The notes under the pieces are model-generated. The model had not been told where the DNA came from, did not search any database, and was given only the letters and a program-made list of their open reading frames with translations. This document shows positions 2,621 to 60,500 of a stretch of DNA of 64,000 nt, piece by piece. The translations under genes were made by a program, and so were the position numbers. The number at the start of each line of letters is the position of its first letter. Position 1 is the stretch's first letter. Origin of the DNA: Mustelus asterias (Eukaryota); the NCBI RefSeq assembly GCF_964213995.1, contig NW_027590120.1:1240001-1304000 (forward strand), in the 5' to 3' direction.

Positions 2621-4200
2621 TAACTTTACTTTTACTTACTGGTCAGGGTAATGTGTTTATTCCTCATTCTCTGTACTGCAACCTACAAATCCTCTTGCTC
2701 CTTCACCTTTAAACGCTTATTCAGTTCCTATTTCTAATACCTTACTCGTCAATTTATATGTGCCGTGCCACCTTCATGGTCTCCGGTCACCATGGTTTTA
2801 TTGAATGAAACAGAAAGGATATTTACTGATTGTCGGGCGTCAATGTCAAAACACCGCAATAATGGTCACGTCGCCTGGTGGCGGTTTCGAGTGACGGCAT
2901 GTTTTTTTGAATTGGTAAAAATGTATTCACTGCCTTGAACTATTTGTATTCACTTCGAGCCATTTTAAAGCGGTGAGGAAATTTCCTAAATGAATGGATG
3001 TCTGGTCATAGAGACAGAGTACGTGACTAAGAGAACGAGAGATCAGAAAAGTGACCAAGAGAAAGATAACTAATCAGAAAAAAATGTCTGTAGCTCTCAT
3101 TTATTGGTGGGTAATAATCAGCAGTTCTGGCAGAGAAGCCAATCCTGTTCCTGGAAAAACGACAGTTTCTCAATAAGTGAAGCCAGATTCCAAAGTGGGT
3201 CGGACTTTATGTCAGGCTGCAACATTCAACATAATTGGAGCATTTTGTTACTTTCTGTCGAATTCTAAAGCAGACAGCATTGTCTCTCTGCGAGGTCAGT
3301 ATATTTTTAAATGGTCAGCGTGACATCCAGGTGTTACATTTAGTCCCTGAAGCATTCCGTATTTGTGTTACAGGAATGAATGACTATGAATCAGTGTCCA
3401 ATAGAAACATAGAAAATAGGAGCATGAGAAGGCCTTTCAGCCCTTCGAGCCGACTCCATCCTCCTTATGTTCATGGTTGATCATCGAGCTCAGTAATCTA
3501 TTCCTTCTTTTCACCATTTAGCCACGAGAACTGCATTTATCTACTTCTTGATAATATGCAATATTCTGCCCAGATTTGCTTTCTATAGTAGTGAATTCTA
3601 TCGGCTTTTCACTCTGTGAGTATATAAATGTCCCTCTAAAAGGGAAATAAAGAGATGTTCAGTGCTTATGTAGTGTTTTGAATATCTATAACGAATCAGT
3701 TGGACGAAATATCTCGTGTAAATGTTTCTTTCGGGGCCTCGTCAGTGGATACCCTAGTCTGAGTGACAACAGAGTGTTGTTCATCATTACAGGCAGACCC
3801 GCAGAAGGCAGCAAAGGACAAATGGGGACTTCAGTTTGAGTAACGTCACGCAAACATGGTGGATGCCGATCTGCTGTCTGTGCGATTCTTGCCGGTCATT
3901 ATTGTGTAATATTTGGTTTATAACATGCCGCATGTTAAAAGAATGCACAATTCACCAGTAGCAGAAAGGACTGTTTTGCTGAAATATTGATTTTATAATG
4001 GATCTGTCGGCTTAATTCGATTCTGTTGTTTTTCCGTTCTTGGCCCCTCCTGGGAACATCTGCGTGACAGTTTGATCCGAGGTTAATGCGGTTTCCTATC
4101 AGTTTGTGTTTGAGTGCCTGACGGCGACGCTGCTCATTGCGGCTGCATCTGTCCACGATTCAACACAGCAGAGAGGAGATCTCACTTACATTGCTGAGAC

Positions 4201-4697
4201 AGTTTTTGTGCAGGAGGCAGATTGCTTTCTATCACTGTGCGTCCCAGAAAGCGCAGTAATACACGGCAGCGTCAGCAGCTGCAGATCCGAGATAGTCAAA
4301 CTGGTGTTAATTCGAGTTCTGGAATACAGTCGAGAAACGGATTTTAGCAAAATCTGCTTTAACTCCACCACCTCCTGCGTAGACCCTCAGTATATACTCG
4401 GGATGGGAGTCTGGATGTTTTCGGTACCAGAGTAAATAATAGTCACTCCATGCAGTATCTCAAAAACAGTACAAAATCACCGCTTCACCTTCCGTCTCAA
4501 CATCTGAGGACAGCGGCTGTGACAGAATCTTCATGACTCAGATCTGGAAAAGATGTTCAAACAGATAAATATTGGACTGACGTGTGCTCAAATTTCAGAT
4601 TCAACATAAGTTTTTCTTTAATGAGAAAACAAACGAGATGTCCACAAATACCTGTCAGAAATGTTTCCCACACAACCCAGATGTTGAGTATCCGCAT
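4201..4697 (-). pseudogene. TCR alpha/delta-type V segment V2 (leader 4697-4652, V exon 4543-4240, 23-RSS 4239-4201); frameshifted pseudogene
   Basis: Leader MRILNIWVVWETFLT|GT. V fragments EGEAVILYC, YLLWYRKHP, LTISDLQL, DAAVYYCAFWD lie in shifted frames with internal stops. Canonical RSS CACAGTG-23-ACAAAAACT. Confidence 0.92.
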
Positions 4698-5277
4698 TGT
4701 CTCTGTCCCCTCTGTAAAAGGGGGATCGGATATTTGAAGACACCCGTTCTGGTCCCCACATTCAATACTCTGATGACTTGCCTCCGAATGCTCACACCGT
4801 CAGTTCCGTGTCTCGCCAGTGATACCGTGAAATTGGTTATTGCTTAGCTGACTGTCACTGAATGGAAGCTCCAAAATCTGTACTCCAGTCGGTGTCTTTA
4901 TAGGACACATTTTTCTGCCATAGAAATGGGATGTGACTGAAACTTTCATTTGGTTATTATTCAGTGTGGCTTCTCGTTCTTAGTCGCAGTTTTCATGCAG
5001 CGATGATTTCAGAAGGAAGTTAAGGATTAAACATATTGCTGTGGGTCTGGAGCGAGGCTGGATAAGGATGGCAGATTCCCTTCTTTCCACAACATTGTTA
5101 ATTCAATTGGGAATTTATCCTAATACCACGGTGCCAATGTCACCACTTATTCCAGCTTTAATTTCAGATGTTGATTTGATTGATTAAATTCAATTGCCCC
5201 TGCGACAGTGAACGAAGTCCAAATCATGTAGGCGGATTATTAATCATTGTCTCCTGGATTCCAGTACCGTAAAATGT

Positions 5278-5660
5278 CACTGTGTAATCCAGCAATTAAT
5301 CCAGTTTTTTCTAGATTACTGCTCTGTAACACATCACTGTGTAATCCAACAAATAATCCAGTTCTCCTGGATTCCTGACCTGGAACATTTCACTGTGTAA
5401 TCCAACAATTAATCCAGTTCCCCTGGATTTCTGCTCTGTAACATATCACTGTATAATTCAACACTGAATCCAGTTCTCCTGGATTTCTGCCCTGTAACAT
5501 TTCACTTTGTAATCCAACAATTAATGCAGTTCTCCTCGAATTCTGCTCTGTAACATTTCACTGTGAAATGGAACCCGCTCCTGCTTCAGTGAACACACAA
5601 ACACAGCGAGGGAGCTCCCTCTTGCGGCGCAGTGAGGTAAATGACCTCTGCCTGGGAGAC
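5278..5660 (-). repeat. Short array (~6 units) of the 56-bp RSS-like satellite plus CTCF-like head sequence
   Basis: CACTGTG-type words at 5278, 5335, 5391, 5447, 5503 and 5559 (four perfect). The flank 5566-5657 is the reverse complement of 55183-55274. Confidence 0.9.
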
Positions 5661-6056
5661 CATTATTTTCTCAGATTATTGAAGAGTATATTTGCCGGAT
5701 TAGGCTGCTGCATTTTTCTTGTTGCTATTATTCTTAAGAAATATAATTTCATGCGGATGAACCTATGCACAGAACTGATAACAATTTCTGTGTGAATCTT
5801 CGTCTATTCATTTATTTGATTTTACGATCATAGAACAGCCCGTTAAATAATGCCTGTGTTACACAATGTGGCACTCGAAGAATACTTACAGAATGAGGAG
5901 TCTTAAATGTTCACGCAAAGAAAGGATGCAAATATAACTCTATTTTCACGTTGATCTGATATACTGCGGGGTTCAATGTACGTGCTCCATTTTTAAAAAA
6001 ATCTCAGATTTGTGTCTGTGTATATTGTGCGCGATAACTGCTCCCAATTGTTTGGG

Positions 6057-7327: not shown

Positions 7328-7560
7328 GCAGACTGGAAGTTCCAGTTATTGATCAGCGGAGGGCGCGCTTCCTGAGGGTGGTCACAGAGCCATTAATAAA
7401 ATATCAACACAAAACACAACACCCAACAAGAGGAGGAACAACAACTGAGGAATTATGTTAGTTGCTTCTAACTAACCTAACTAACACGTGAGTGGCATGT
7501 TGGCACAGCTGCCTCACAGTGCCGGGAACGCTGTTTCGATTCCCGGCTTGGGTCACTGTC

Positions 7561-10561: not shown

Positions 10562-10939
10562 GGTTTCTGTACGAGCTCTCCATATGTTTGTTACACTGTG
10601 CCTCACGGCGCAGAGATAGGCGGCAGTGTCTGTTAGCTGGGTGTCTCTCACAGTCAGGACACTGAGTTTGTTGTCTCCCTCGACTGTGGCAGTGATCCTC
10701 CTGTGTTGATCGGTTTCTCTTGTGGCCATCACCAGATGTTGAGGTGGTTGATTTGGGAACTGTCTGTACCAATGCACCATGTTCATCACCCTGGCGCTGG
10801 TACAATTCATGGTTACGATTCCCTCTTCACTAACTTCCGTCCACTGAGGGAGCTGCAGCAACTCATGTCCAACAGTCACCGCGGTGCAGATCAGAGTGAA
10901 AAACAGCAAAAAGAATTTATAAACCCAAAGGACTATCAT
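10562..10939 (-). CDS. TCR alpha/delta-type V segment V4, open reading frame with in-frame leader and canonical 23-RSS; potentially functional
   Basis: MIVLWVYKFFLLFFTLICTAVTVG-HELLQLPQ...TMNCTS...VHWYRQFPNQPPQ...LTVRDTQLTDTAAYLCAVR. RSS CACAGTG (10600-10594)-23-ACAGAAACC (10570-10562). Confidence 0.9.
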
Positions 10940-14562: not shown

Positions 14563-15079
14563 AGTTTTTGCATGAGGCCCGCGGGAACCTCATTCACTCT
14601 AGGTCTCAGTGCGCAGTAATACACGGCGCTGTCTGTCATCTTCAAATCTTCCATTGACAAGTGAAAAGTGTTTTGTTTCAGATTGAGATTCCCGCTGAAC
14701 TGTTCAAATCGAGGAGCCGTCTCGATAAATACATAACTAGCAGCTCTGAGCAGATACTGAGGAGTTCGGAGTGTATATTGGCGATACCAGAACAGGTAAT
14801 GTTGTGCAGCTGAACTCGGTACCGAGTAACTGCAGGGTATTGCTGAATCTTCACCCGCTTCTGCTTCAACTCCTGGTTCTGACTGGGACAATGAGTCTCC
14901 GTTACTCATGTCTGAAAAAAGGCAACAGAAACGCAGCGGGTTAGAAGGAGTAACAACAACGGAATAAGCGCCTCGAGGTGGAAATGGGGAATGAATATGG
15001 TGATTGAGGATTTCACGCAGAAGTTCAAAATGACAGACCTGCAATCAGGACAACAATCGGAGTCAGAGTTCCATCCCAT
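14563..15079 (-). pseudogene. TCR alpha/delta-type V segment V6: open V exon (14911-14602) but frameshifted leader and defective RSS heptamer
   Basis: DMSNGDSLSQSEP...IPCSYS...LFWYRQY...LKMTDSAVYYCALRP. RSS is TAGAGTG-23-GCAAAAACT. Leader ATG (15079) is out of frame with TLTPIVVLIA|GT. Confidence 0.88.
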
Positions 15080-28619: not shown

Positions 28620-30927
<2,308 letters not shown>

Positions 30928-31677: not shown

Positions 31678-32610
31678 TGGCCGGCTCCATCCCCCCCTCA
31701 TTCCCCACCTGCCGGCTCCATCCCCCCTTCATTCCCCACCCGCCGGCTCCATCCCCCCCTCATTCCCCACCCGCCGGCTCCGTCCCCCCCTCATTCCCCA
31801 CCCGCCGGCTCCGTCCCTCCCTCATTCCCCACCCGCCGGCTCCGTCCCCCCCTCATTCCCCACCCGCCGGCTCCGTCCCTCCCTCATTCCCCACCCGCCG
31901 GCTCCATCCCCCCCTCATTCCCCACCCGCCGGCTCCATCCCCCCCCTCATTCCCCACCCGCCGGCTCCATCCCCTCCCTCATTCCCCACCCGCCGGCTCC
32001 ATCCCCCCCTCATTCCCCACCCGCCGGCTCCATCCCCCTTCATTCCCCACCCGCCGGCTCCATCCCTCCCTCATCCCCCACCCGCCGGCTCCATCCCTCC
32101 CTCATTCCCCACCCGCTGGCTCCATCCCCCCCATTCCCCACCTGCCGGCTCCATCCCCCCCTCATTCCCCACCCGCCGGCTCCATCCCCCCCTCATTCCC
32201 CACCCGCCGGCTCCATCCCCCCCTCATTCCCCACCCGCCGGCTCCATCCCCCCCTCATTCCCCACTCACCGGCTCCATCCCCCCCTCATTCCCCACCCGC
32301 CGGCTCCATCCCCCCCTCTTCCCCCACCGCCGGCTCCATCCCCCCCTCTTCCCCCACCGCCGGCTCCATCCCCCCCTCTTCCCCCACCGCCGGCTCCATC
32401 CCACCCTCATTCCCCACCCACCGGATCCATCCAAAGAACAAAGAACAATACAGCACAGGAACAGGCCCTTTGGCCCCCCAAGCCCATGCCGCTCCCTGGT
32501 CCAAACTAGACCATTCTTTTGTATCCCTCCATTCCCACCCACCGGCTCCGTCCCTCCCTCATTCCCCACCCGCCGGCTCCATCCCCCCCTCATTCCCCAC
32601 CCGCCGGTTT
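31678..32610. repeat. C-rich ~31-bp minisatellite (CCCACCCGCCGGCTCCATCCCCCCCTCATTC)n
   Basis: Periodicity read directly; G-runs on the minus strand. Confidence 0.95.
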
Positions 32611-35820: not shown

Positions 35821-36489
35821 TGTCAGCAGGAGGAGAGAATGTTGTGATTTTCACAGAATCCCAACAGCGCAGAAAGAGGCCATTCGGCCCATCGAGTCTG
35901 CACCGACCACAATCCCACCCAGGCCCCATCCCCTTAACCCCATGCAGTTACCCTAGCTAGTCCCCCTGACACGAAGGGGCAATTTAACATGGTCAATCCA
36001 CCTAACCTGTGGGAGGAAACAGGAGCACCCGGAGGAAACCCATACAGATGTCTAGGAGGAAAATGTACAAACTCCACGCTGACAGTGACCCACGCCGGGA
36101 ATCGAATCCATGTCCCTGCTGCTGTGAGGCAGCAGTGCCACCGTGCCACTCCCTCATTTAAAGGTCAGTGTTTTGTGCAGACCCAGACTGAGTGGCAGGT
36201 TCCTTTCCCTGAAGGACATTAATGTACCGGTTGCGTTTTTACAAAAATCCAGCAGCTTTCATGGTCACTTTTTCCTTCATGCTGTCCCCATAAATTACCA
36301 GATTTATTCAGCTCAATTTCACAACCTGCCTTTGTGTTTTTGTGGTTATCTCTCACTCCCTTGTTTCTGTTTTAAATCAATTTCACAGGTTTTAGGAGGA
36401 CTTGCAGTCAGGAAATTCAAACCATACATCACACCCGGATCTGACAGTCGCACAACTTATCACAACGTGAATATCATCGGATTTTGAAC

Positions 36490-37752
36490 ATGGAAGGAAA
36501 AAGCACCATTCACAGTGGAGAGAAACCGTACGTGTGTTCTGTGTGTGGACGAGGCTTCAACCAATCATCTGACCTGTTGAGACACAAGCGCAGTCACACC
36601 AGGAAGAAACCGTGGAAATGTGAGGATTGTGGGAAGGGATTCAGATCCCCATCTCACCTTGAAAAGCATTGCCGCTGTCACACTGGGGAGAAGCCATTCA
36701 CCTGCTCTGACTGTGGGAAGGGATTCACTCAGTCAACCAACTTGCTGAGACACCAGCGAGTTCACAGTGGGGAGAGGCCAATGACCTCCTCTGAGTGTGC
36801 AAAGAAACGCCAACGAGTTCACACCGGGGAGAAGCCATTCATCTGCTCCGAGTGTGGGAAGAGATTCTCAAGGTCATCTAACCTGCTGATGCACCAGCGA
36901 GTTCACACTGAAGAGAAACCTTTTAAATGCTCAGACTGTGGGAAGTGCTATAAAAGTTCTGGGGAACTTTTGTCCCATCAACGTGTTCACACTGATGCGA
37001 GACCATTCAGGTGCTCTGACTGTGGGAGTGGGTTCAAGACATCCTCTGCCCTAACTAAACACCAGCGCACTCACACTAATGTGAGACCTTTCAGATGCTC
37101 TCAGTGTGGCACTGCATTCAGGCAATTGAGTAACCTGTCTGTACACCAGCGCACTCACACTGGGGAGAGGCCATTCACCTGCTCTCAGTGTGGGAAGGGA
37201 TTCGCTCATTCATGTACTCTGCAGAGACACCAGCGAGTTCACACTCACGAGAAACCTTACATCTGCTCCAAGTGTGGAAGACGATTCACTCAGTTATCGA
37301 CCCTGCTGAAACACCAGCAAGTTCACACGACTGAGAGACCATTTAAATGTCCAGACTGTGGGAAGAGCTATAAAAGTTCTGGGGAACTGATGCGCCATCA
37401 ACGTGTTCACACTGATGAGAGACCGTTCAGGTGTTCTCACTGTGAGACTGGGTTCAAGACATCATCTGCCCTCACTTCACACCAGCGCACTCACACTGAG
37501 GAGCGACCGTTTAAATGCCCAGACTGTGGGAAATGCTATAAAAGTTCAGGAGAACTGGTACGTCATCAACGTGTTCACACTGGGGAGAGACCGTTCAGGT
37601 GCTCTGACTGTGGGACTAGGTTCAGAGAATTATCTCATCTCACTGTGCACCGGCGCACTCACACTGGGGAGAGGCCATTCACCTGCTCTGTCTGTGGGAA
37701 GGGATTTGCTTCTTCATCCAATCTGCTGACACACCAGCGAGTTCATAAATGA
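36490..37752 (+). CDS. C2H2 zinc-finger protein ZNF-B (14 intact fingers plus 1 degenerate; no KRAB/SCAN visible)
   Basis: Uninterrupted [17 protein letters not shown]...HQRVHK*; splice acceptor ttcacag at 36388. Confidence 0.93.
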
Positions 37753-39605
37753 CGACCGTGATTGGATTTTGCCATTATTTACATCCAGAAATGAAGCATG
37801 TTGATTGGGCTCTGTTTCTGCTGATGTTCATAAACTCCATCTCAGCTGAGTTAATATTCCAGATAAATGTTAAATCAATCAGATTTGTGTTGAATCTTTT
37901 TAATATCTCGAACATAGATCAATTCCTACTGAAGGTCTCTCCCTCACCCTTGTCTCCTCCATCCTCACCTCCAGCAACAAGCGAGGAGTTCATGGAGCTT
38001 CTTTGTCATTAAGCTTGAGACAATCTGATCAGCTGTTTCTGCTGCTTCGCTCCCTTCCACAAGCCCACCGGGACAAACTGTCTTTACCATGGTCAATCCA
38101 CCCGACCTACTCATCTTTGGACTGTGGGAAACCGGAGCACCCGAAGGAAACCCACGCAAACATGGGAGAATGGACAAATTCGACAAAGACAGTCCCCTGA
38201 GGTCGGAATTGAACCCGGGTCGCCGGTGCTGTGAGGCAGCAGTGCTAACCACTGTGCCACCGTGCTGCCTACCTCATCTACTGACACCTCAATGAGTTCA
38301 TGTGTCTTCAGGAGCTGCATTCTGCAGTTATTGCTGCTGTTAATCACATTCAAGACAAAATGTGTGGGATATTCCTGAGGTGTGTAAGAAAAGCATCCCA
38401 ACCACTCTCTTCCATGGTTCAGAGCTCCTCAACACGGGCGGCACTGTGGCACAGTGGTTGGAATGCTGCCTCACAGCGCCAGGAACCCGGGTTCAATTTC
38501 CAGCTTGGGTCACTGTCTGTGTGGAGTTTGCACATTTTCCCCGTGTCTACGTGGGTTTCCTCCGGGTGCTCCGGTTTCCTCCCACAGTCCAAAGATGTGA
38601 GGGTTAGGTGAATTGGCCATGATAAAATTCCCCTTAGTGTCGGGGCACTAGCTAAGATAAATTCATGGCGTTATGGGGATAGGGCCTGGGTGGGATTGTG
38701 GTTAGTGCAGATTCGATGGACCGAATGGCTTTCTGCATTGTAGGATTCTAAGACACGGAACAAAGATTCCTTTACAACTGTGTTTCGAGTTGGGAAGAAC
38801 AGCGGTGAATGCTGGCAGTGTGCTGTTAAATCAAAGATTGGTTTAAATCTGGGATCTGTTCCTGAAACAGCAGGTTTAAATTTCCAGACTGAAAATGACT
38901 GGTCAACATTTTGTGAAGATTATTTTTAATTCATTGCTTGTGGTCTATCCCTAACTGCCCTTGGACTGAGTGGCTTGCTTGCTGGACCATTCCAGAGTCA
39001 ACCACATCGTGTGGACCTGGAGTCACATGAAAGACTTACAGATGCTGCCAGACCTGCTGAGATTTTCCAGCATCCTCTGGCCTTATTCTGGAGTCGTATA
39101 AATTACTTCCCTAAAGGGCATCAGTGAATATCGCTGAACCAAATGGGTTTGAACAGCAATGGTTTCATGGTCATCGCTAGACCTTTAATTACAGATTTTT
39201 ATTGACTTCAGATTTCACCATTTGCTGTGGTGTGATTGGAAGCTGGCTCCCCAGAGCATTACCCTCGGACTCTGGGTTACTAGCCCAGTGACAATACCAC
39301 CACACCATCAGATTGAGAGCATTTGTGTGACAGTCCTGAGTCTACAACTTTCAGACCGGTGTTAATATGTTTAAAATAAACTGTTTTAAAATAAATCAAT
39401 TCAAGTCTACATTACATACTCGTTGAAGGAATTCACAGGAGCCTGGGACAATTATACAACAGACATGAGGAGCTGCAGTGTGTTTGCAGGAATGCCCTGT
39501 TTTATTGATGTGTGTGTGTTCTGACACCAGGATAACTAAAAATACACAAACCTGGAACATCCCCTGACTCCATTCCCAACAGTTACTCTGGGATTACTCC
39601 TTCTG

Positions 39606-41550
39606 TTCAGTGAGTTCAGGGGAATGCTCACAGAGGGAATGGAGCAGGGAGAGAGGATCCCTGGGGTGATGTTCAGTGAGTTCAGGGGGATGGAGTCAGA
39701 GGGAATGGAGCAGGGAGGGAGGATCTCTGGGGTGATGCTCAGTGAGTTCAGGAGGATGGAGTCAGAGGGAATGGGGTAGGGAGGGAGGATCCCTGGGGTG
39801 ATGCTCAGTGAGTTCAGGGGGATGGAGTCAGAGGGAATGGAGCAGGGAGGGAGGATCCCTGGGGTGATGCTCAGTGAGTTCAGGGGGATGGAGTCAGAGG
39901 GAATGGAGCAGGGAGGAAGGATCCCTGGGGTGATGCTCAGTGAGTTCAGGGGGATGGAGTCAGAGGGAATGGAGCAGGGAGGGAGGATCCCTGGGGGGAT
40001 GGAGTCAGGGGGATGGAGCAGGGAGAGAGGGTCCCTGGGATGATGTTCAGGGGGATGGAGCAGGGGGGAAGGATCCCTGGGGTGATGCTCAGTGAGTTCA
40101 GGGGGATGGAGTCAGAGGGAATGGAGCAGGGAGGGAGGATCCCTGGGGTGATGCTCTGAGTTCAGGGGGATGGAGTCAGAGGGAATGGAGCAGGGAGAGA
40201 GGATCCCTGGGGTGATGTTCAGTGAGTTCAGGGGGATGGAGTCAGAGGGAATGGAGCAGGGAGGGAGGATCCCTGGGGTGAAGGTTCAGGGGGATGGAGC
40301 AGGGGGGAAGGATCCCTGGGGTGATGCTCAGTGAGTTCAGGGGGATGGAGTCAGAGGGAATGGAGCAGGGGGGAAGGATCCCTGGGGTGATGCTCAGTGA
40401 GTTCAGGGGGATGGAGTCAGAGGGAATGGAGCAGGGAGAGAGGGTCCATGGGGTGATGCTCAGTGAGTTCAAGGGGATGGAGTCAGAGGGATTGGAGCAG
40501 GGGGGAAGGATCCCTGGGGTGATGCTCAGTGAGTTCAGGGGGATGGAGTCAGAGGGAATGGAGCAGGGAGAGAGGATCCATGGGGTGATGCTCAGTGAGT
40601 TCAGGGGGATGGAGTCAGAGGGAATGGAGCAGGGGGGAAGGATCCCTGGGGTGATGCTCAGTGAGTTCAGGGGGATGGAGTCAGAGGGAATGGAGCAGGG
40701 AGAGAGGGTCCATGGGGTGATGTTCAGTGAGTTCAGGGGGATGGAGTCAGAGGGAATGGAGCAGGGAGAGAGGGTCCATGGGGTGATGTTCAGTGAGTTC
40801 AGGGGGATGGAGTCAGAGGGAATGGAGCAGGGAGACAGGAGCCCTGGGGTGATGCTCAGTGAGTTCAGGGGGATGGAGTCAGAGGGAATGGAGCAGGGAG
40901 GGAGGATCCCTGGGGTGATGCTCAGTGAGTTCAGGGGGATGGAGTCAGAGGGAATGGAGCAGGGAGGGAGGATCCCTGGGGTGATGCTCTGAGTTCAGGG
41001 GGATGGAGTCAGAGGGAATGGAGCAGGGGGACAGGAGCCCTGGGGGGATGCTCAGTGAGTTCAGGGGGATGGAGTCAGAGGGAATGGAGCAGGGAGAGAG
41101 GATCCCTGGGGTGATGCTCAGTGAGTTCAGGGGGATGGAGTCAGAGGGAATGGAGCAGGGAGAGAGGATCCCTGGGGTGATGCTCAGTGAGTTCAGGGGG
41201 ATGGAGTCAGAGGGAATGGAGCAGGGAGAGAGGGTCCCTGGGGTGATGCTCAGTGAGTTCAGGGGGATGGAGTCAGAGGGAATGGAGCAGGGAGAGAGGA
41301 TCCCTGGGGTGATGCTCAGTGAGTTCAGGGGGATGGAGTCAGAGGGAATGGAGCAGGGAGAGAGGATCCCTGGGGTGATGCTCAGTGAGTTCAGGGGGAT
41401 GGAGTCAGAGGGAATGGAGCAGGGAGGGAGGATCCCTGGGGTGATGCTCTGAGTTCAGGGGGATGGAGTCAGAGGGAATGGAGCAGGGGGACAGGAGCCC
41501 TGGGGGGATGCTCAGTGAGTTCAGGGGGATGGAGTCAGAGGGAATGGAGC
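39606..41550. repeat. G-rich 66-bp minisatellite, ~29 copies
   Basis: Unit GGGGTGATGCTCAGTGAGTTCAGGGGGATGGAGTCAGAGGGAATGGAGCAGGGAGAGAGGATCCCT. Confidence 0.96.
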
Positions 41551-49920: not shown

Positions 49921-51365
49921 GATCAGGTCAGAGAGTAAAGACCAGTTCTGCTCAATCGCTCCTCATTGCACAGTCCTGTCATCCCAGGAAGCAGTCTGGT
50001 GAACGTTTGTTACTCGTCCTCTGGGGCAATTCTCTGGGTAAGGAGACCCAAACTCTGCAGTGTTCCACATGTGGTTTCACCAAAACTGGATACAATTTCA
50101 GAAAGCTTTCCTCACTCGGAAACTGCATCCCTGGGGAATAAAGGCTAACAGACCATCTGCATCTCTCCTTAGGGATGCTGCCAGACCTGCTGAGATTTTC
50201 CAGCATTTTCTCTTTTGGTTCCTCATTCAAGCATCTGCAGTAATTTGCTTTTATTTGGTTAGAAGTGGGGGATTTACACACAGAAAATTCAAATCAAGGA
50301 ATGGTTTGTCTCTTCTGAATTTATGTCCTGGTTTAACAGTGATGATCTTTTTGGAAACTCTATTTACAGGATACAGCAATTGGAAATTGGACATGGAAAA
50401 CGTTTTGGGGCTGCACAGTGGTTAGCACTGCTGCCACAGAGCGCCAAAGACCAGGGTTCGATTCCAGCCGCGGGCGATTGTCTGTGTGGAGTTTGCACGT
50501 TCTCCGTGTCTGCATGGATTTCTTCCCGTGGTCCAAAGATGTGCAGGTTAGGTGGATTAGTCAATAACTGCTCAAAAGATAATCCCAGAAACTACAGGTC
50601 AGTCAGTTCAATGCTAGTGATAGGGAAGATTCCTGAAACAATAATTCAGGACATATTTACTAATCACCTGAGTAAATGTGGGTTAAGAACGACAGTGTTC
50701 AGAGGAAATGGTGTTTATCGAACCTGGTTAAATATTTTGATGAGGTCACAGATCCCGTTGTTGAGGATAATGCTGTTAATGTGGTGAACATGGACTTCCA
50801 AAAAGCATCAGATAAATTGCTGCACAGCAGACATCGGAGCACAGGTATGACTCGTGGAATAAAAGGGACAGCAGCAGCATTGACACAAAATTGTCTGGGG
50901 GACAGGAAACACACAAAATACTGGTTAATGGATGTTTGGGAGTTCCTCAGGAGCTGGTGTTAACACCCAGCTCTTCCTAATGTATACAAATGACCCAGAC
51001 CTTGGTGTTCAGGGACAGTTTAGAAATTTGTGGACAGAATCTGTGTCGACCCAGACTGGGTGGCAGGTTTCCTTCCCGAAGGACATTAGTGAACCAGTTG
51101 GGTTTTTATGAGAATCCACCAGTTTTAATGGTCACTTTTCCCGGGAGCCGGCCCCGCAAATGACCAGATTCATTCAGCTCAATTTCACAAACTGCCTTTG
51201 TGTTTTTGTGGGTTCTCTCTCACTCCATTTTTTTCTGTTTTGAAACAGTTACACAGCATTTTAGAAGAGGAGGATTTGCAGTCGGGAAACTGAAACGAAA
51301 CATCACATCACAATCTGGTGGAGTTTTCCAATTTATCGTAACTTGAATATCATTTGATTTTGAAC

Positions 51366-52411
51366 ATGGAAGGAACAAGCACCATTTACAATGGGGAGAA
51401 ACCATACACGTGCTCTCTGTGTGGACGAGGCTTCAGCCAATCATCTGACCTGTTGAAACACAAATGCAGTCAATCCAGGAAGAAACCGTGGAAATGCAGG
51501 GATTGTGGGAAGGGATTCAAATCCCCGTCTGGCCTGGAAAGTCATTGGCTCAGTCACACTGGGGAGAAACCGTTCACCTGCTTCGAATGTGGGAAGGGAT
51601 TCACTCGTCAATCCTACCTTCTGATACATCAGCGACTTCACACTGGGGAAAGGCCGTTCACCTGTTCTGTGTGTGGGAAGGGATTCATTCAGTCATCCAC
51701 CCTGTTGAATCACCAGCGAGTTCACACTGAGGAGAGACCATTTAAATGCTCAGACTGTGGGAAGTGTTACAAATGTTCTGGGGAACTGATGCGCCATCAA
51801 CGTGTTCACAGCAATGAGAGGCCATTCACCTGTTCCATGTGTGGGAAAGGATTTACTCAGCAATACAAACTGCAGACACACCAGCGAGTTCACACTGATG
51901 AGAGACCTTTTACATGTACAGACTGTGGAAAGCGCTTTAAAAGTTCCCAGGACTTGATGCAGCATCAACCTGTTCACACTGATGAGAGACCGTTCAGATG
52001 CTCTCACTGTGGGTCTGCATTCAAGCGATCGTCTCACCTGACTGTGCACCAGCAAATTCACACTGGGGAGAGGCTGTTCACCTGCCCTGAGTGTGGAAAG
52101 GGATTTACTCAGTCATCCGTCCTTCTGACACCCAGTGTGTTCAAACTGGGGGGAGACCATTCATCTGCTCTGAGTGTGGGAAGGGATTCCCTTCCTCATC
52201 CAAACTTCTGATGCACCAGCACGTTCACACTGGGGAGAGACCGTTCACCTGCTCTGTGTGTGGGAAGGGTTTCACTCAGTCATCGAACCTACTGACACAC
52301 CAGCGAGTTCACACTGGGGAGAGGCCATTCACATGTGCTGAATGTGGGAAGGGATTTGCTTATTTTTCTGTACTGATGAGACACCAACAAGCTCACAAAC
52401 AATTACAATGA
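51366..52411 (+). pseudogene. C2H2 zinc-finger gene ZNF-C, paralogue of ZNF-B with a single frameshift near 52130
   Basis: ORF 51354..52211 continues as 52091..52411; shares intron and 3' flank with ZNF-B. It could still encode a truncated ~9-finger protein. Confidence 0.85.
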
Positions 52412-53075: not shown

Positions 53076-55210
53076 AAAAGCTGCCTCTGTTGCTTCCCTT
53101 CCTCCCACGAGCCCACCCTTGACCCCGGTGTCTTTGTTCCCCTCCTGCCCATCTCTCATTACAACTTCCAAAATCCCTGTCGTCTCCCAAATCTCTGCCC
53201 ATATGTCCTGAAATTCCCTGTGTGAATCCCTCTGATTACATTTGTCTTTCACACAGTATCAAACAGCTCTTACCAAAGTCTCAAATTACTGTGTGAATAT
53301 GACTCGGGTAAGTTATCTGTCACTGTCCTTTTTAGTCAGTCTGCAGTTATTGACACCATTGACCAAAGCATCTTCCTCCAGTGCCTCTCCATTGTTGTCC
53401 AGCTGGGTGGGACTGCACACTTCGGATTAATTTCTTTTCTGATTATAGTCAGAGAATCACCGGCAGTCATTGTGATTATTACAGACAGAGAACAAGTGAA
53501 TAGAGGGAGCAAAGTAAATGGGGAAAGAGACAGTGAGAGTGAATGGGATGGAAGTTCGTAAACTGAGACAAAGAGAATCAGATTGAGACAGAAAATGGGG
53601 TCAACATTGTTCCAAAGAGAAGAGATTAATACTTTTCAAACCTTCCTGATCATTATAACTTATCAATTTCTGTAAAATATTTTGAGTGAATGGAACAAGG
53701 CCTGGATATGAGATTCTGAAACTCCCTCCCTAACTGTCCAGATTAAAGGTGTTTGTTAAGGTCTGTCTCTCCAAACAAGGTTTTGGCCATCCATCCTAAT
53801 ATTGTGCTCTGTGACCCAGTAATTCTAGTTGCTGATCTATCAGTAATGGACTTGCTGCCGTCTGGAACAAAACTGTTTTCACCACTAAGTCTCCGCTGTG
53901 ATGTAATAGTCTCTATGACATCATCGCAGCAGGACTGGATGACATCATCAGAGTCCATTGTTTCTGAATGATCCACATCAATAACAACAGGAAATACTCA
54001 TCAAGCTGAGCACATTATCTAGGCTGACACTGCAGTCTGACACTGAGGGACTGCTGCACTCTGACATAAACTGTCCTTCACATGGAGCTTGTGGAGGCTC
54101 TGGCCACAATCTTCCAATCCTTCTCATAGAGTTGTGGTGCCAAAAGGCTGAGAGATTGGAAATGTTACATCCCTGTTCAAAAAATTACAGAACAATCATC
54201 TTAACATCAGCGGTGGAGAAAAATGAAACCAATAATCTGGGGCACAATCAACTGGTACTTGGAAAAGTGTGGATTCTTATTGTCAGCATTTTCTGTTTTA
54301 ATGCTGAAAACTTCCCTGGATCTCAAGGCTGGGAAAGACATTCTGGAAGGTCATCCCCCCCCATTCCTCTCTCTATCCCTCCTCCCATCCCTCCCTACAA
54401 CAAGAACCATTCACTCTGCACCGCAGTTTCACCCTCATTCCCCCAGTTTGTATTCCAGCCTTTACCACACCCACTCTGCTCCCAGATACTTCACACCATT
54501 AGATATTACAATTCAAACTTTATAATCTCTACAATTTAATATTTGTTCAGACAGCAGACAAATCATCAATTCCACTCCCACCCTGAGCTATGGGGATATC
54601 TTTATACATTATCTCATTTCACAATAAAACTCACACACTGAATTTCAGATTTGCTTCTGTTGTTTTAATTTGCCCAGCAGATTATTTGGAGTGAGACTGA
54701 CATCAACCCTTCATGGTCTCAGTCTGTCTCTGTGTTTGTGAGAGTGTCTGAGATAGTGTGTGTGTCTGAGCGTGTGTATGTATGAGTGTGTATCTGTGCG
54801 TGCTGTGTGTGTGTTTGTGTGAGATTATAGAAAGATAGAAACTAGAAGCAGGAGGAAGCCATTCGGCCCTTCGAGCCTGCTCCGCCATTCATTTTGATCA
54901 TGGCTGATCATCGAATTCAATATTCTGATCCCCCTTCTTCCCACACCTTTAGCCCCAAGAGCTATATCTAATTTATTCTTGGAATCATATGTATGTGTCT
55001 GCATTTTTCTGAGTATTTGTGTGTCTATGAGTTTGTCTGTATTTGTTTCCGAGATTGATATCAGTTATGAGAATAGATTCGTCTGCATTAAAATATATTA
55101 AAATAAGAATAGTAGGAATAAGAAAAATACAGCAGCACAATCCTCCAACAGGATCCTTCAGTAATCTGAGAATTCAGTGACTTCCCAGGCAGAGGCCATT
55201 TACCTCACAT

Positions 55211-55228
55211 CGCCACAAGAGGGAGCTC
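55211..55228 (+). promoter_or_regulatory. CTCF-like motif CGCCACAAGAGGGAGCTC at the head of the satellite (second copy at 5612-5630, minus strand)
   Basis: Close match by eye to the CTCF core CCACCAGGGGGCGC. It overlaps the perfect palindrome GAGGGAGCTCCCTC. Confidence 0.6.
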
Positions 55229-55271
55229 CCTCGCTGTGTTTGTGTGTTCACTGCAGCAGGAGCGGGTTCCA

Positions 55272-57500
55272 TTACACAGTGAAATGTAACAGAGCAGAAA
55301 TCCAGGGGAACTGGATTAATTGTTGGATTACACAGTGAAATGTAACAGAGCAGAAATCCAGGGGAACTGGATTAATTGTTGGATTACACAGTGAAATGTA
55401 ACAGAGCAGAAATCCAGGGGAACTGGATTAATTGTTGGATTACACAGTGATATGTTACAGAGCAGAAATCCAGGAGAACTGGATTAATTGTTGGATTACA
55501 CAGTGAAATGTAACAGAGCAGAAATCCAGGGGAACTGGATTAATTGTTGGATTACACAGTGAAATGTAACAGAGCAGAAATCCAGGGGAACTGGATTAAT
55601 TGTTGGATTACACAGTGAAATGTAACAGAGCAGAAATCCAGGGGAACTGGATTAATTGTTGGATTACACAGTGATATGTAACAGAGCAGTAATCCAGGGG
55701 AACTGGATTAATTGTTGGATTACACAGTGACGTATTAAAGAGCAGTAATCCAGGAGAACTGGATTAATTGTTAGATTACACAGTGATATTTTACAGAGCA
55801 GAAATCCAGGGGAACTGGATTAATTGTTAGATTACACAGTGATATGTTACAGAGCAGTAATCCAGGAGAACTGGATTAATTGTTGGATTTCACAGTGATA
55901 TGTTACAGAGCAGTAATCCAGGGGAACTGGATTAATTGTTAGATTACACAGTGATATGTAACAGAGCAGAAATCCAGGGGAACTGGATTAATTGTTAGAT
56001 TACACAGTGATATGTTACAGAGCAGTAATCCAGGAGAACTGGATTAATTGTTGGATTTCACAGTGATATGTTACAGAGCAGTAATCCAGGGAACTGGATT
56101 AATTGTTAGATTACACAGTGATATGTTACAGAGCAGTAATCCAGGGAACTGGATTAATTGTTAGATTACACAGTGATATGTTACAGAGCAGTAATCCAGG
56201 GAACTGGATTAATTGTTAGATTACACAGTGATATGTTACAGAGCAGTAATCCAGGGAACTGGATTAATTGTTAGATTACACAGTGATATGTTACAGAGCA
56301 GAAATCCAGGGGAACTGGATTAATTGTTGGATTACACAGTGATATGTTACAGAGCAGTAATCCAGGGAACTGGATTAATTGTTAGATTACACAGTGATAT
56401 GTTACAGAGCAGTAATCCAGGGAACTGGATTAATTGTTGGATTACACAGTGATATGTTACAGAGCAGTAATCCAGGGAACTGGATTAATTGTTAGATTAC
56501 ACAGTGATATGTTACAGAGCAGAAATCCAGGGGAACTGGATTAATTGTTGGATTACACAGTGATATATTACAGAGCAGAAATCCAGGAGAACTGGATTAA
56601 TTGTTGGATTACACAGTGATATGTAACAGAGCAGAAATCCAGGAGAACTGGATTAATTGTTAGATTACACAGTGATATGTTACAGAGCAGAAATCCAGGG
56701 GAACTGGATTAATTGTTGGATTACACAGTGATATGTTACAGAGCAGTAATCCAGGAGAACTGGAGTAATTGTTGGATTACACAGTGAAATGTAACAGAGC
56801 AGAAATCCAAGAGAACTGGATTAATTGTTGGATTACACAGTGATATGTTACAGAGCAGAAATCCAGGAGAACTGGATTAATTGTTGGATTACACAGTGAT
56901 ATGTTACAGAGCAGTAATCCAGGAGAACTGGATTCATTGTTGGATTACACAGTGATATGTTACAGAGCAGTAATCCAGGAGAACTGGATTCATTGTTGGA
57001 TTACACAGTGATATGTTACAGAGCAGTAATCCAGGGGAACTGGATTAATTGTTGGATTACACAGTGATATGTAACAGAGCAGAAATCCAGGAGAACTGGA
57101 TTAATTGTTGGATTACACAGTGATATGTAACAGAGCAGAAATCCAGGGGAACTGGATTAATTGTTGGATTACACAGTGATATGTAACAGAGCAGAAATCC
57201 AGGGGAACTGGATTAATTGTTAGATTACACAGTGATATGTCACAGAGCAGCAATCCAGGAGAACTGGATTAATTGTTAGATTACACAGTGACATATTACA
57301 GAGCAGCAATCCAGGGGAACTGGATTAATTGTTAGATTACACAGTGATATGTTACAGAGCAGCAATCCAGGAGAACTGGATTAATTGTTAGATTACACAG
57401 TGACATATTACAGAGCAGTAATCCAGGGGAACTGGAGTAATTGTTAGATTACACAGTGATATGTTACAGAGCAGAAATCCCGGAGAACTGGATTAATTGT
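55272..57500 (+). repeat. 56-bp tandem satellite, ~40 copies (TTACACAGTGATATGTTACAGAGCAG[A/T]AATCCAGG[A/G]GAACTGGATTAATTGTT[G/A]GA)
   Basis: Periodicity read directly. Each unit contains CACAGTG and an internal inverted repeat AATCCAG...CTGGATT. Confidence 0.97.
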
Positions 57501-60500
57501 GTGTGTGTGTGTGTGTGTGTGTCCCTGGGCACAGTTCCCAGAGAGTTTAAAATCTTCTTACAGCTAGCCAATTCCTGATCCAAACCGCTAAATCACCCTC
57601 AATCCCATGCCTCCGTATCTTCTGCAATAGCTTAACCGTGAGGTTAGAGTGTTAAAATCTGAAATAAAACAGTCAACGCCACAAAGAGTCAACAGGCCCG
57701 GCAGTTTGTGTGGAGGCAGAAACAGAGTGAAACACACAGTTAAACATCCATATGAATCAAGAGCAGCAGTAGACCTTTGGGCTGCTCTGCTCCAGATAAG
57801 ATCCCAGCTGATCTGACTGTGACCAAAACTCCACTTTCCTCTCAAGAATTCAATGAATCAGCCTTAAAAATATTCAATGACTCTCTCTCCACTGCTCTCT
57901 GGGGAAGAGAATTCCACAGACCAAAGACCCTCTGAGAGAAAAAAAAATCTCATTCTCTCTCTTTCAGACGTCTTAAATCCGCTCGTTCTCCGGAGCCACA
58001 CAGGGAAAGCCAGACCCGTGAAGAAGGGAGAGAGGGAGGTGGAGAAGAACAAAATGAAAAATCTGCAAACTGATAACATGATTCACAGCCCAAGACCAAA
58101 ACGAGTGTTAATGGGACAAGTAAAGACACAAAAGATGATCTGGATGAGGTGTAAATAGTCCGAATGCAAAGTAAAGAAAACAAGAGGGAAATGAGGTGAA
58201 AAAAGCAACAACGAAACACAGAACACAATGGGGGCAGAGATTGTGGTGTAAAATTGTTGAGCTCAGTTTTGTTCTGAAGGCTGTAAAGTGTCTCTTTTAG
58301 TTGCGGGAAATATTATATTTCCCAGTTCCGATGACAGGTCACATTCAGTCTGTTTCTCTCTCCACAGAGGCTGCCTGACTTGTTGAGTATTTCCAGCGTT
58401 TCCTGTTTTATGTCACAGAGAATGTCGAAGAATTGTTACACCCGGAACAGATGTCTCTTCCTCGGGACACTCCAGCTCGGGTCAGGGTGGGGGGATAATG
58501 TTCACTGTTTTAGATTTGTGTCTGGTGCGAGTAATACCTTAAATTAAATGGAGAAGTTTTTTAAACTGAAGAGAGTAACTGAAACTGACTTTAAACAACA
58601 TTAACAAGCCAGGGCTGCTGGAGAAACATTTAGGGATTTGTGAGCAGTCAGTTCCGGCTGGTTTGAAGTGAAATCCTGTCGGTGCTGCGGCAAATCTGAA
58701 CTCAAACCAGACAAACTGGAACCGCTGGGTTAGAGATTCCGGGTGTTGGGATGTGGAGGCTGGGGGAGGGGGAGATGGCGGCAAAACTCTGAGCCTGACT
58801 TCAGACAGGGTGAGCGGGGTAAAGGGGAGGAATGACAGAGTTAATGTGGGAGTCAGGGACAATAGCAGAAGGTGGGAAGCTCTGGAAAGGAGCAATGGGG
58901 GTAAAGGCCATCACAGAATGCTTGTTTAAATGAAGATAAAAGCAAAATACTGCGGGTGCTGGAATCTGAAACAGGAAATGCTGGAAATCTCAGCGGATCT
59001 GACTGCATCTGTGGAGAGAGAACAGAATTAATGTTTCCAGTCTGGATGGTCATAGGTGCTGCCAGAAATGCTGAGGTTCTCCAGCATTTTCTGTTTGTGT
59101 TTAACTGAAGGTTCAGCAGGGAAACAAGCAGCGATTTCACACACACTAAACCCAGGGGGAGGGGGTGACCCAGGATAAGGGACAGGCGCAGCTCAGTGAG
59201 GCTCTGCAAAGTCCAGCAATCTGTCCACATTGAGAGCTTAGAGCGCCAAGGGGGAGGGGAAGGACAAACTATTTGGGACACAGCAGGAGGTCACCCCTCC
59301 CCCCACTCTGTGGTTCCACAACCCCTCCCACACCTGGGCAAGGTTGGCTCAAGGTGCAGGAAGCTGCAAGCTGAGAGGCTGAGCTGTGAACTGGGCCGGG
59401 TTAGGGGTTTGAGTGACAGTCCTGGGGCTATTTCAGGACAGGAACTGCCACAGATTCCCTCTTTTTCCTGGGACGTTTCACTGGAGCTGTGTTGGTGAGT
59501 GTTTGTAATCTCTGTCTCACTGTCTCGGTAATGGGGGTGGGTTGTAGATTGCTGTGAGTGTTAGACTAAAATAACCTCGCCTCATGCTGCCAGTTCCAGT
59601 CTGCAGACTCCATTTCTCAGTCCAGTCTGCTGCTCTGTCTCTGTCTGTCTGTACTTTGCTGCAGTGCTCCACATTCTGAGCAACATCCAGCCCATTGTTG
59701 TCACCCGAAATTTGCGGCAAACTACCTTCACTGTGACACAGCGGTTAGCACTGCTGCCTCACTGAGTCTGGGTTCGATTCCAGCGGTGGGTGACTGTCTG
59801 TGTGGAGGTTGCTCAGGAAGAAGTCTCATAACACCAAGTTAAAGTCCAATAAGTTTATTTGGAATCAAAGCAAATTACTGCGGATGCTGAAATTTGAAAC
59901 CAAAAGAGAAATTGCTGGAAAATCTCAGCCGATATGGCAGGATCTGTAAGGAGAGAAAAGAACTGATGCTTCGAGTCCACATGACTCTTTATCAAAGCTT
60001 TGACAAAGAGTCATCTGGACTCGAAATGTCAGCTCTTTTCTGTCCTTACAGATGTTGCCAAACCTGCTGAGATTTTCCAGCATTCTCTCTTTTGGTTATT
60101 TGGAATCACGAGCTTTCAGAGCACTGCTCCTTCATCAGCGCTCTGAAAGCTTGTGGTTCCAAATAAACCTGTTGGTCTTTAACCTTGTGTTGTGAGGCTT
60201 CTTACTGTGCTCACCCCAGTTCAGCACTGGCATCTCCACCTCATGTGTGGAGTTTGCACAATCTCCCTCTGTCTGTGTGCATTTCCTCTGGGTGCTCCGG
60301 TTTTTTCTCATAGCCCAAAGATGTGCAGGGTTGGTAAATTTGTCCCTTGGTGTCCAAGATATGTAGTGTCTAATTTGATTTTTATTGTCGCATGTTCTGG
60401 GATACAGTGAAAAGTATTATTTCTTGCGTGCTATTCAGAAAAAAAATAAATTGAAAGAGTACAGAGGGGGAAAGGAAAAGAGTAGGGTGCAGAATATATT

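What the first reader, a model, noticed from the sequence alone, without database searches (positions are those of the whole stretch)
55272..57500. Tandem array of ~40 12-spacer RSS-like elements near a TCR V cluster
Seen: exactly half of each 56-bp unit is CACAGTG + 12 nt + GCAG(A/T)AATC (first copy: heptamer 55275-55281, spacer 55282-55293, nonamer 55294-55302). The heptamer is the perfect RAG consensus. GCAGAAATC matches ACAAAAACC at 6/9 with the A-tract kept, and each deviation also occurs in a V-segment nonamer in this window (ACAGAAACC, GCAAAAACT, ACAAAAATC). The other variant, GCAGTAATC, is weaker. Established: TCR alpha/delta V segments carry 23-RSSs and join to 12-RSSs. Inference: the array may be a RAG substrate, such as a deleting or decoy element (compare deltaRec/psiJalpha or kappa-deleting element), a RAG sink, or an amplified relic of a signal end or RAG/Transib-type terminal repeat. 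It could also be a coincidental satellite.
Basis: partly seen in the sequence, partly recalled or inferred. Interest (0 to 1): 0.82.

Follow-up and report, generated by a model that had tools for sequence, protein, structure and literature searches.

The report
RSS-like minisatellite beside TCR V genes
Forty 56-base repeats, each carrying a good look-alike of the signal that the RAG gene-cutting enzyme recognises, lie near T-cell-receptor V genes; this is most likely an ordinary, locally amplified minisatellite, and whether RAG ever cuts it is untested.

Summary
Positions 55271-57500 are a 56-bp tandem array (39.9 copies, 95% matches). All 40 of 40 units read CACAGTG + 12 nt + GCAG[A/T/C]AATC.

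Both arrays follow the same 220-bp head (81% identical).

By published mouse-RAG assays the unit looks like a usable weak-to-moderate 12-signal.

Nothing shows selection for that. The heptamer and nonamer are not significantly better conserved than the rest of the unit (p=0.08-0.2). Two of 6 heptamers in the old copy have lost CAC. The nonamer overlaps a 7-bp palindrome arm.

Read depth in a related organism gives roughly 0.1-0.24 Mb genome-wide, so this is not a major satellite. Two copies within 50 kb argue for local clustering.

Unchecked earlier notes list nine more ~56-bp arrays beside TCR V genes in this genome.

No RAG-type junctions, RIC scores or genome-wide map could be obtained.

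Verdict: a locally amplified minisatellite carrying a cryptic 12-RSS. A RAG-related role is possible but unproven.

The parts
55271..57500 (+). Main array: 40 units of 56 bp (7 of 55 bp; the last is cut short), each = CACAGTG + 12 nt + GCAG[A/T/C]AATC + a 28-nt second half containing the palindrome AATCCAG-5 nt-CTGGATT
55275..55302 (+). First RSS-like element (heptamer 55275-55281, spacer 55282-55293, nonamer 55294-55302)
55051..55270 (+). 220-bp non-repeated 'head' directly 5' of the array; shared with the second copy (81.4% identity, E 2e-55)
57498..57522 (.). (TG)12.5 microsatellite that closes the array
5250..5569 (-). Second, decayed array of the same repeat (5.7 copies, 81% matches). Heptamers of its 6 units: 4 CACAGTG, 1 CAAAGTG, 1 TACAGTG
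5570..5788 (-). Head of the second copy
4195..4239 (-). 23-RSS (CACAGTG + 23 + ACAAAAACT) of a V pseudogene (two in-frame stops) whose exon ends at 4240; array 1 lies about 1 kb upstream on the same strand
10562..10888 (-). V exon (Pfam V-set, E 1e-10) with 23-RSS CACAGTG + 23 + ACAGAAACC
14589..14834 (-). V exon (Pfam V-set, E 4e-10); its signal has nonamer GCAAAAACT but heptamer TAGAGTG

Best explanation
This is a minisatellite that belongs to a small composite repeat: a 220-bp head followed by a variable run of 56-bp units. It grows and shrinks by slippage and unequal exchange, and it has been copied locally, so it sits in and beside a TCR V cluster. It has no selected RAG-related function. 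As a by-product of its sequence, every unit is a plausible weak-to-moderate cryptic 12-RSS. If the region is open in thymocytes, RAG could occasionally cut at the CACAGTG borders. The geometry predicts what such cuts would produce. With the four minus-strand V segments in this window, array 2 would give a chromosomal signal joint and loss of the DNA between them. With any minus-strand V beyond 57.5 kb, it would give a dead-end V-to-array coding joint. Shown: the array, its motif, the head, the second copy, local clustering, modest genome copy number, and no excess conservation of the motif. Inferred: the neutral mode of evolution, the RAG competence (from mouse data) and the predicted products.
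For: (1) The array shows typical minisatellite dynamics. Variants sit in blocks: 6 of the first 7 units share the AAATGTAACAGA spacer, all 7 units of 55 bp lie between 56059 and 56499, and the 3 GCAGCAATC units are consecutive at 57228-57395. (2) The motif is not protected. In array 2 the variable sites are heptamer 0 of 7, spacer 5 of 12, nonamer 1 of 9 and rest 7 of 28. Fisher tests give p=0.08 for heptamer+nonamer against the rest and p=0.18 for the heptamer alone. The single variable nonamer site is position 5, which splits A 20, T 17, C 3. In the old copy the mismatches to the unit are heptamer 2/42, spacer 11/72, nonamer 7/54 and rest 15/147 (p=0.20). Two of its 6 heptamers have lost CAC. 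(3) The last four nonamer bases are the left arm of a 7-bp palindrome present in every unit (z -3.0), which is another reason for those bases to be there. (4) The unit to the left of each heptamer is only the other half of the repeat; no V, D or J-like coding flank is present. (5) Homology between the two copies stops exactly at the head and the array, so a small module was copied, not a V cassette. (6) Copy number is modest. In raw reads of organism B (1.92 Gb read) the 13 array bins sum to about 402x in both directions, or about 67 kb of read bases. The head bins show 27-62x and neighbouring LINE pieces 2,500-16,000x. Head-to-array contigs about 90% identical exist in organisms B and C (table 8). 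(7) Chance is not excluded: 1.4e-4 per random 56-mer, and many satellite families and many windows were screened.
Against: A perfect heptamer in 40 of 40 units, an exact 12-nt spacer and an A-tract 9-mer are unlikely for any one satellite (1.4e-4). The repeat occurs twice within 50 kb, once inside the V cluster; with 50-1000 copies per genome that has a chance probability of 0.001-0.03. Nine unchecked earlier notes place arrays with a period near 56 bp beside TCR V genes elsewhere in this genome. Together they hold about 82 kb, the same order as the whole-genome estimate for organism B, which would mean strong enrichment at TCR loci. The spacer is the most variable part and the heptamer the least, which is the pattern of real signals even though it is not significant here. 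Neutrality is inferred from weak statistics on one array and six old units.
Confidence: 0.65

Rival explanations
1. The arrays are real, selected RAG targets in the TCR locus: tandem 12-signals that pair with V 23-signals and act as decoys, V-deleting elements or places that hold RAG in the V region.
For: The motif scores well by published mouse assays. CACAGTG followed by AT is top-ranked. Nonamer positions 4-6 are R-W-R in 37 of 40 units. The coding flank ends in ...TTA and is not poly-pyrimidine. Worse cryptic signals recombine at 0.4-0.6% in plasmids. The repeat is low-copy and locally clustered. Array 2 faces, in the J-like convergent sense, any minus-strand V lying beyond 57.5 kb (geometry). 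Unchecked notes report many such arrays by TCR V genes.
Against: There is no excess conservation of the motif. Nonamer position 5 is the most polymorphic site, and C at that position is predicted to abolish the RAG1 R391 contact. The old copy has lost CAC in 2 of 6 units. The two arrays in the window have opposite orientations, and neither is convergent with the four V segments in the window. No RAG-type joint was seen, although the tissues of the runs are unknown and most rows of the tables were not shown. The earlier notes come from windows that look chosen for immune loci, so their association with TCR genes is biased.
Confidence: 0.08
2. The unit descends from a genuine 12-RSS (for example of a D or J segment) plus 28 nt of flank. 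It was amplified in tandem and then spread; it is a fossil with no present role.
For: The RSS-like part is exactly half of the unit (28 of 56 nt). It lies in a TCR locus. Unchecked notes describe tandem arrays of complete 23-RSS (61-bp period) behind V-delta segments in the same genome, which would show that signals do get amplified in tandem there.
Against: The 28 nt to the left of the heptamer have no J- or D-like reading (my inspection). The V segments nearby carry 23-signals, not 12-signals. No donor segment was found in the window. The nonamer is tied into a palindrome.
Confidence: 0.15
3. The head plus array is part of a transposable element, possibly one with RAG/Transib-type ends, and the heptamer is a relic of its terminus.
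For: A discrete module (head + array) recurs with sharp homology borders. It is present at roughly 40-200 copies in organism B, if 0.3-0.7x coverage is assumed. An unchecked note mentions a long-TIR element ending in CACAGTG elsewhere in this genome.
Against: There is no inverted partner around either copy. No transposase ORF is nearby; only LINE reverse transcriptase, zinc fingers and V-set were found. There is no tRNA or Rfam match in the head. An apparent 'empty site' joint (54909 to 57861) turned out to be two separate LINE 3' fragments. The heptamer is internal to every unit, not terminal.
Confidence: 0.07
4. The array is a protein-binding platform unrelated to RAG. Each unit carries a 7-bp palindrome and three GGATT/AATCC motifs; from memory, TAATCC is the site of K50 paired-type homeodomain proteins.
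For: The palindrome AATCCAG-5 nt-CTGGATT is in every unit, with variation in the loop (positions 33-34) and almost none in the arms. Array 1 lies about 0.5-1 kb upstream of a V on the same strand.
Against: The 4 units with arm changes (56780, 57452, 56724, 57396) show no compensating change. The factor assignment is recalled, not tested. No expression or chromatin data were available.
Confidence: 0.05

Closest known systems
Cryptic recombination signals in mouse gamma (major) satellite (Cowell et al. 2003, PMC2193808; passages and section 18 read)
   Same: A tandem satellite in which each unit holds a heptamer-spacer-nonamer look-alike. One active gamma-satellite signal has a nonamer ending AAATC, like this unit. 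Those signals recombined in plasmids (0.6% and 0.02%) and showed RAG-induced breaks at the heptamer. The authors also raised the 'safe sink' and 'link to the ancestral transposon' ideas.
   Different: The gamma-satellite has a 234-bp unit, 23-spacer signals and imperfect heptamers. It makes up about 6% of the mouse genome and is pericentromeric, not tied to receptor loci. Here the unit is 56 bp with a perfect heptamer and a 12-spacer. The repeat is low-copy (about 0.1-0.24 Mb estimated in a relative) and lies in or near a TCR V cluster. No cleavage data exist.
Cryptic 12-RSS embedded in VH gene segments (same paper, Table III)
   Same: A 12-spacer signal with a CACAGT-type heptamer, a spacer starting ATA and a poor nonamer. 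These are active at 0.03-0.6% in plasmid assays.
   Different: Those are single copies inside coding V exons and are used for VH replacement. This is a non-coding tandem array.
Deleting elements (kappa-deleting element; deltaRec/psiJalpha). Recalled, not looked up here
   Same: Isolated signals without a functional coding segment whose use removes part of a receptor locus.
   Different: Those are single, conserved signals placed to delete a constant region or the delta locus, with known recurrent joints. Here there are 40 tandem copies, two orientations in one window and no known joints.
Ordinary minisatellites
   Same: Head-to-tail units of tens of bases, block-wise variants, length differences between copies (40 against 5.7 units) and a microsatellite at the edge.
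   Different: Every unit carries a full RSS look-alike, and the array sits in a locus where RAG works.

Membership tests
Functional 12-RSS (RAG recombination signal) | Heptamer beginning CAC, consensus CACAGTG | tested here: met
   40 of 40 units in array 2; 4 of 6 in array 1
Functional 12-RSS (RAG recombination signal) | Spacer of 12 (+/-1) nt | tested here: met
   12 nt in 40 of 40 units; 8 spacer variants; 30 of 40 start with AT, the best class in the mouse assay
Functional 12-RSS (RAG recombination signal) | A-rich nonamer able to bind the RAG1 nonamer-binding domain | tested here: inconclusive
   6/9 to consensus in 20 units and 5/9 in 20. Positions 4-6 are R-W-R in 37 of 40. C at position 5 in 3 units is predicted to be bad. 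This is judged from mouse data only; no RIC or NF score was computed.
Functional 12-RSS (RAG recombination signal) | Abuts a V, D or J coding segment | tested here: not met
   The flank is the other half of the repeat. There is no J-like reading and no V on the plus strand downstream.
Functional 12-RSS (RAG recombination signal) | RAG-dependent cleavage at the heptamer border and joints in lymphocytes | not testable with these tools
   Only DNA runs of unknown tissue were found and no RNA holder. No RAG-type joint appears among the rows shown.
Satellite with cryptic RSS (gamma-satellite type) | Tandem repeat whose unit contains a heptamer-spacer-nonamer look-alike | tested here: met
Satellite with cryptic RSS (gamma-satellite type) | Shown recombination or RAG-induced breaks | not testable with these tools
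Deleting element (kappa-deleting element / deltaRec type) | Single conserved signal placed convergently so that its use deletes a defined locus part | tested here: not met
   There are 40 tandem copies. The two arrays have opposite strands. Array 2 is divergent from, and array 1 is in the same direction as, the four V signals in the window.
Transib / ProtoRAG-type terminal inverted repeat relic | Paired inverted termini, target-site duplication, transposase or its remains | tested here: not met
   No inverted partner. No transposase domain in 10 ORFs scanned. The apparent empty site was rejected.
Minisatellite | Head-to-tail units of 10-100 bp with block-wise variants and variable copy number | tested here: met

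The most novel reading that the evidence does not exclude
A low-copy family of tandem 12-RSS arrays is confined largely to TCR V regions, is shared by several related cartilaginous fishes, and is really used by RAG. V 23-signals would join to the arrays in thymocytes, giving dead-end or V-deleting rearrangements that shape V usage or soak up RAG activity. That would make it a multi-copy counterpart of deleting elements, and a living example of how signals spread by tandem amplification.
Probability: 0.08. Interest if true: 0.85.

Novelty: new member of a known kind. Interest (0 to 1): 0.4.

Why it matters
RAG is most active at antigen-receptor loci, and an array of 40 good 12-signals within reach of V 23-signals looks like a hazard. 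If RAG ignores the array, that shows how strongly chromatin and locus architecture, rather than sequence, limit RAG. If RAG uses it, that would be a new kind of element shaping a T-cell-receptor repertoire. It would also give a directly testable case for how recombination signals multiply. As it stands, this is a well-formed cryptic signal inside an ordinary minisatellite, with an intriguing but unverified link to TCR V regions.

Tried and rejected
1) LINE 3'-tail idea. A CR1-like LINE lies upstream of array 1 on the same strand (reverse-transcriptase ORFs 9537 to 7477). However, it ends in its own 7-bp repeat at 7562-7595, 1.8 kb before the head. Rejected.

2) Insertion with an empty site. 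Reads and contigs join 54909 to 57858/57861. BLAST inside the window shows that both sides are separate fragments of the same LINE 3' region, so the joints are simply other LINE copies. Rejected.

3) Terminal inverted repeats around either copy: none found.

4) SINE-like head: no tRNA and no Rfam match.

5) Extended duplication. Sensitive BLAST of 2.8-3 kb on each side of both copies found only the 220-bp head, plus chance hits of 16-23 nt.

6) Other copies in public collections. The metagenome scan gave 0 matches. The protein route through a V exon gave 1 hit on a 1-kb contig, which was useless for context.

7) RIC-12 scoring was not done because no model is available offline. I used published assay rules instead.

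8) Literature. Five searches found no paper describing an RSS-like satellite in a shark TCR locus. Supplements were closed, so tables of nonamer scores (PMC12711392) and SARP-seq data (PMC9723617) that could score this exact unit were not seen.

9) Earlier-notes searches by sequence and by several word sets came back blank.

10) Depth-to-copy-number conversion assumes a genome of 2.7-6.7 Gb. That range is recalled for sharks and is not known for the coded organism.
Full report
WHAT IS THERE. Tandem Repeats Finder reports a 56-bp array at 55271-57500 with 39.9 copies, 95% matches and score 3781. Cutting at the heptamer gives 40 units: 32 of 56 bp, 7 of 55 bp and a last one cut to 49 bp.

Every one of the 40 units begins CACAGTG, followed by exactly 12 nt and a 9-mer. 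The 9-mer is GCAGAAATC in 20 units, GCAGTAATC in 17 and GCAGCAATC in 3.

The second half of the unit holds a palindrome, AATCCAG-5 nt-CTGGATT. Its left arm overlaps the last four nonamer bases. Folded as single-stranded DNA, a two-unit piece forms both hairpins, with z -3.0 against shuffles. The array ends in a (TG)12 run.

The same repeat occurs a second time at 5250-5569 on the minus strand, with 5.7 copies and 81% matches. Both arrays are preceded by the same 220-bp non-repeated head: 55051-55270 against 5788-5570, 81.4% identical, E 2e-55.

A sensitive comparison of about 3 kb on either side of both copies found nothing else in common. The repeated thing is therefore a small module, head plus array, and not a V cassette.

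Array 1 lies inside the V cluster, about 1 kb upstream and on the same strand as a V pseudogene. That pseudogene has two in-frame stops and an intact 23-RSS at 4195-4239.

CONTEXT. Four V-type ends lie on the minus strand at 4.2, 10.6, 13.2 and 14.6 kb. Two have CACAGTG + 23 nt + a nonamer matching 8/9. The two V exons scanned hit Pfam V-set.

From 20 to 55 kb the window holds LINE reverse-transcriptase remains and three C2H2 zinc-finger ORFs. Array 2 is therefore 40 kb from the nearest V. No V was found on the plus strand after it.

IS THE MOTIF MORE THAN CHANCE? Of 2,000,000 random 56-mers of window composition, 0.62% hold CACAGTG on either strand. Only 0.014% hold it together with a nonamer of at least 6/9 at 12 or 23 nt. 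Outside the arrays, 27 CACAGTG occur in the window. None has such a nonamer at 12 nt. Three have one at 23 nt, and two of those are the V signals.

So the motif is improbable for one satellite. It is not improbable across all the satellite families of a large genome and the many windows screened.

WOULD RAG ACCEPT IT? I could not compute RIC, so I used printed assay results, all obtained with mouse RAG.

- Hoolehan et al. (PMC9723617; abstract and sections 17-19 read) rank 'AT' as the best start of a 12-spacer, with CACAGTG-AT among the top combinations. Here 30 of 40 units start AT, 7 start AA and 3 start AC.
- In the same paper, poly-pyrimidine coding flanks are poor. The flank here ends ...GGATTA.
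- Cryptic nonamers from Pax3 and LMO2 gave 22% and 1% of the consensus.
- Hanout-Chuiko et al. (PMC12711392; abstract and sections 22, 23, 25 read) find that functional nonamers share purine-A/T-purine at positions 4-6. They also find that C or G at position 5 destroys the R391 contact. The A and T variants (37 of 40 units) fit this rule; the C variant (3 units) does not.
- Cowell et al. (PMC2193808; passages and section 18 read) measured 0.4-0.6% recombination for VH cryptic 12-signals with worse heptamers and nonamers. They measured 0.6% for a gamma-satellite signal whose nonamer ends AAATC.

My inference is that a unit would work as a weak-to-moderate 12-signal on a plasmid.

IS THE MOTIF UNDER SELECTION? 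In array 2 the variable sites are heptamer 0 of 7, spacer 5 of 12, nonamer 1 of 9 and rest 7 of 28. This looks like the pattern of real signals, but it is not significant. Heptamer plus nonamer against the rest gives p=0.08, and the heptamer alone gives p=0.18. Other invariant stretches of 7 nt also exist in the unit.

The one variable nonamer site is position 5, and it is the most polymorphic site of the whole unit (A 20, T 17, C 3). In the older array 1, mismatches to the unit are heptamer 2/42, spacer 11/72, nonamer 7/54 and rest 15/147 (p=0.20). Two of its six heptamers have lost CAC.

Variants lie in blocks, as expected from unequal exchange. Nothing here shows that the RSS-like half is maintained for its own sake.

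HOW MANY COPIES, AND WHERE? The one run search found DNA runs of coded organisms A to D holding parts of a 1.2-kb flank-head-array piece, and no RNA holder. The one read-laying run covered 54000-59000 with four runs.

Raw reads of organism B (1.92 Gb read, at least 85% alike) give these depths, both directions summed:
- 22-94x on the flanks from 54000 to 54667;
- about 16,000x, 2,500x and 2,800x on LINE pieces;
- 27-62x on the head;
- 1-104x on the 13 array bins, summing to about 402x, or about 67 kb of read bases.

If the genome is 2.7-6.7 Gb (a range recalled for sharks, not known for this organism), the satellite amounts to about 0.1-0.24 Mb, or 1,700-4,300 units. There would be some 40-200 heads, with about 27 units per head. 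The contig depths of organism B also give about 27 units per head, and those of organism A about 68. The tool warns that these contig depths are not copy numbers.

Contigs spanning the head-array border at about 90% identity exist in organisms B and C (table 8). So the repeat is not a major, evenly spread satellite.

With 50-1000 copies per genome, a second copy within 50 kb has a chance probability of 0.001-0.03. The module is therefore clustered locally.

No joint of RAG type appears among the rows shown. However, the tissues are unknown and most rows were not shown.

LEADS FROM EARLIER NOTES (unchecked AI notes, not evidence). Nine notes on other pieces of this genome, and one 881 kb upstream on the same piece, describe arrays of '12-RSS-like' units beside TCR V or NAR-TCR genes. 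For eight of the nine, the length divided by the stated copy number is 55.6-57.7 bp. The ninth (41 kb) gives no copy number.

Together these arrays hold about 82 kb, the same order as the whole-genome estimate for organism B. If the notes are right, much of the family sits in TCR V regions. But the windows of this genome look chosen for immune loci: 245 of 2,709 notes mention RSS. The readers were also primed to see signals, so the association is biased.

GEOMETRY. Array 2 has its 'coding' side on the left and its signal pointing right. The four V segments have their signals pointing left. Cutting both would leave a signal joint on the chromosome and put everything between them, including three of the V segments, on a circle.

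For a minus-strand V beyond 57.5 kb, array 2 would be in the J-like convergent position. Array 1 points the same way as the V signals, so only inversions are possible. These statements are inferred from coordinates.

ORIGIN. The following were tested:
- No inverted termini.
- No transposase nearby.
- No tRNA or Rfam match in the head.
- The head is not the tail of the nearby CR1-like LINE.
- An apparent empty-site joint is an artefact of two LINE fragments.

The origin of the module stays open.

VERDICT. The best reading (0.65) is a locally amplified minisatellite that happens to be, or once was, a 12-RSS look-alike, with no shown function. It may be an occasional off-target for RAG.

A selected RAG-related role (0.08) is not excluded and is cheaply testable in thymus DNA. 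The closest precedent is the cryptic signals of mouse gamma-satellite. I found no paper on such a repeat in cartilaginous fish. Supplements were closed.

Noticed in passing
window 4240-4560 (minus): The V exon has two in-frame stop codons (…YCF*DT… and …QNSN*HQ…) but a perfect 23-RSS (CACAGTG + 23 + ACAAAAACT). It is a V pseudogene that would still attract RAG.
   Followed up: partly
window 14562-14834 (minus): The V exon is intact by Pfam V-set, but the heptamer of its signal reads TAGAGTG (no CAC) before a good nonamer, GCAAAAACT. It is probably unable to rearrange.
   Followed up: no
window 6057-6273 and 6845-7061: A 217-nt inverted repeat, 99% complementary, with 571 nt between the arms. 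It lies just upstream of the head of array 1. It could be a recent foldback or a small TIR element.
   Followed up: no
window 39607-41550: A G-rich 66-bp satellite of about 29 units, with 132- and 198-bp higher-order periods.
   Followed up: no
window 31680-32432: A C-rich 31-bp tandem array, 24 copies at 94% matches. Long ORFs run through it on the plus strand (31462-32622).
   Followed up: no
window 29134-29991 (minus), 36484-37749 (plus), 51354-52208 (plus): Three C2H2 zinc-finger ORFs (up to 14 fingers) lie between the V cluster and array 2. A zinc-finger gene cluster is interleaved with a TCR V region.
   Followed up: partly
window 7477-9537 (minus): A CR1-like LINE with frameshifted ORF2 pieces and a (GAACATA)n tail at 7562-7595. 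A 646-aa reverse-transcriptase ORF lies at 26165-28105 (minus).
   Followed up: partly
window 55215-55235 and 5605-5625 (minus): Both heads keep a stretch …CA(A/C)GAGGGAGCTCCCTCGCTG… that, from memory, resembles a CTCF core site. It contains a short palindrome (GAGGGAGCTCCCTC). Not tested.
   Followed up: no
window 59898-60097: A perfectly abutting 100-nt inverted repeat (86% complementary, 0 nt between the arms) made of a high-copy element.
   Followed up: no
window 38231-38264, 44596, 50414, 63288 and others: A recurrent SINE-like element contains …GGCACGGT(A/G)GCACAGTGGTTAGCACTGC… It accounts for many of the stray CACAGTG heptamers and raises their frequency to 3.6 times the random expectation.
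   Followed up: partly
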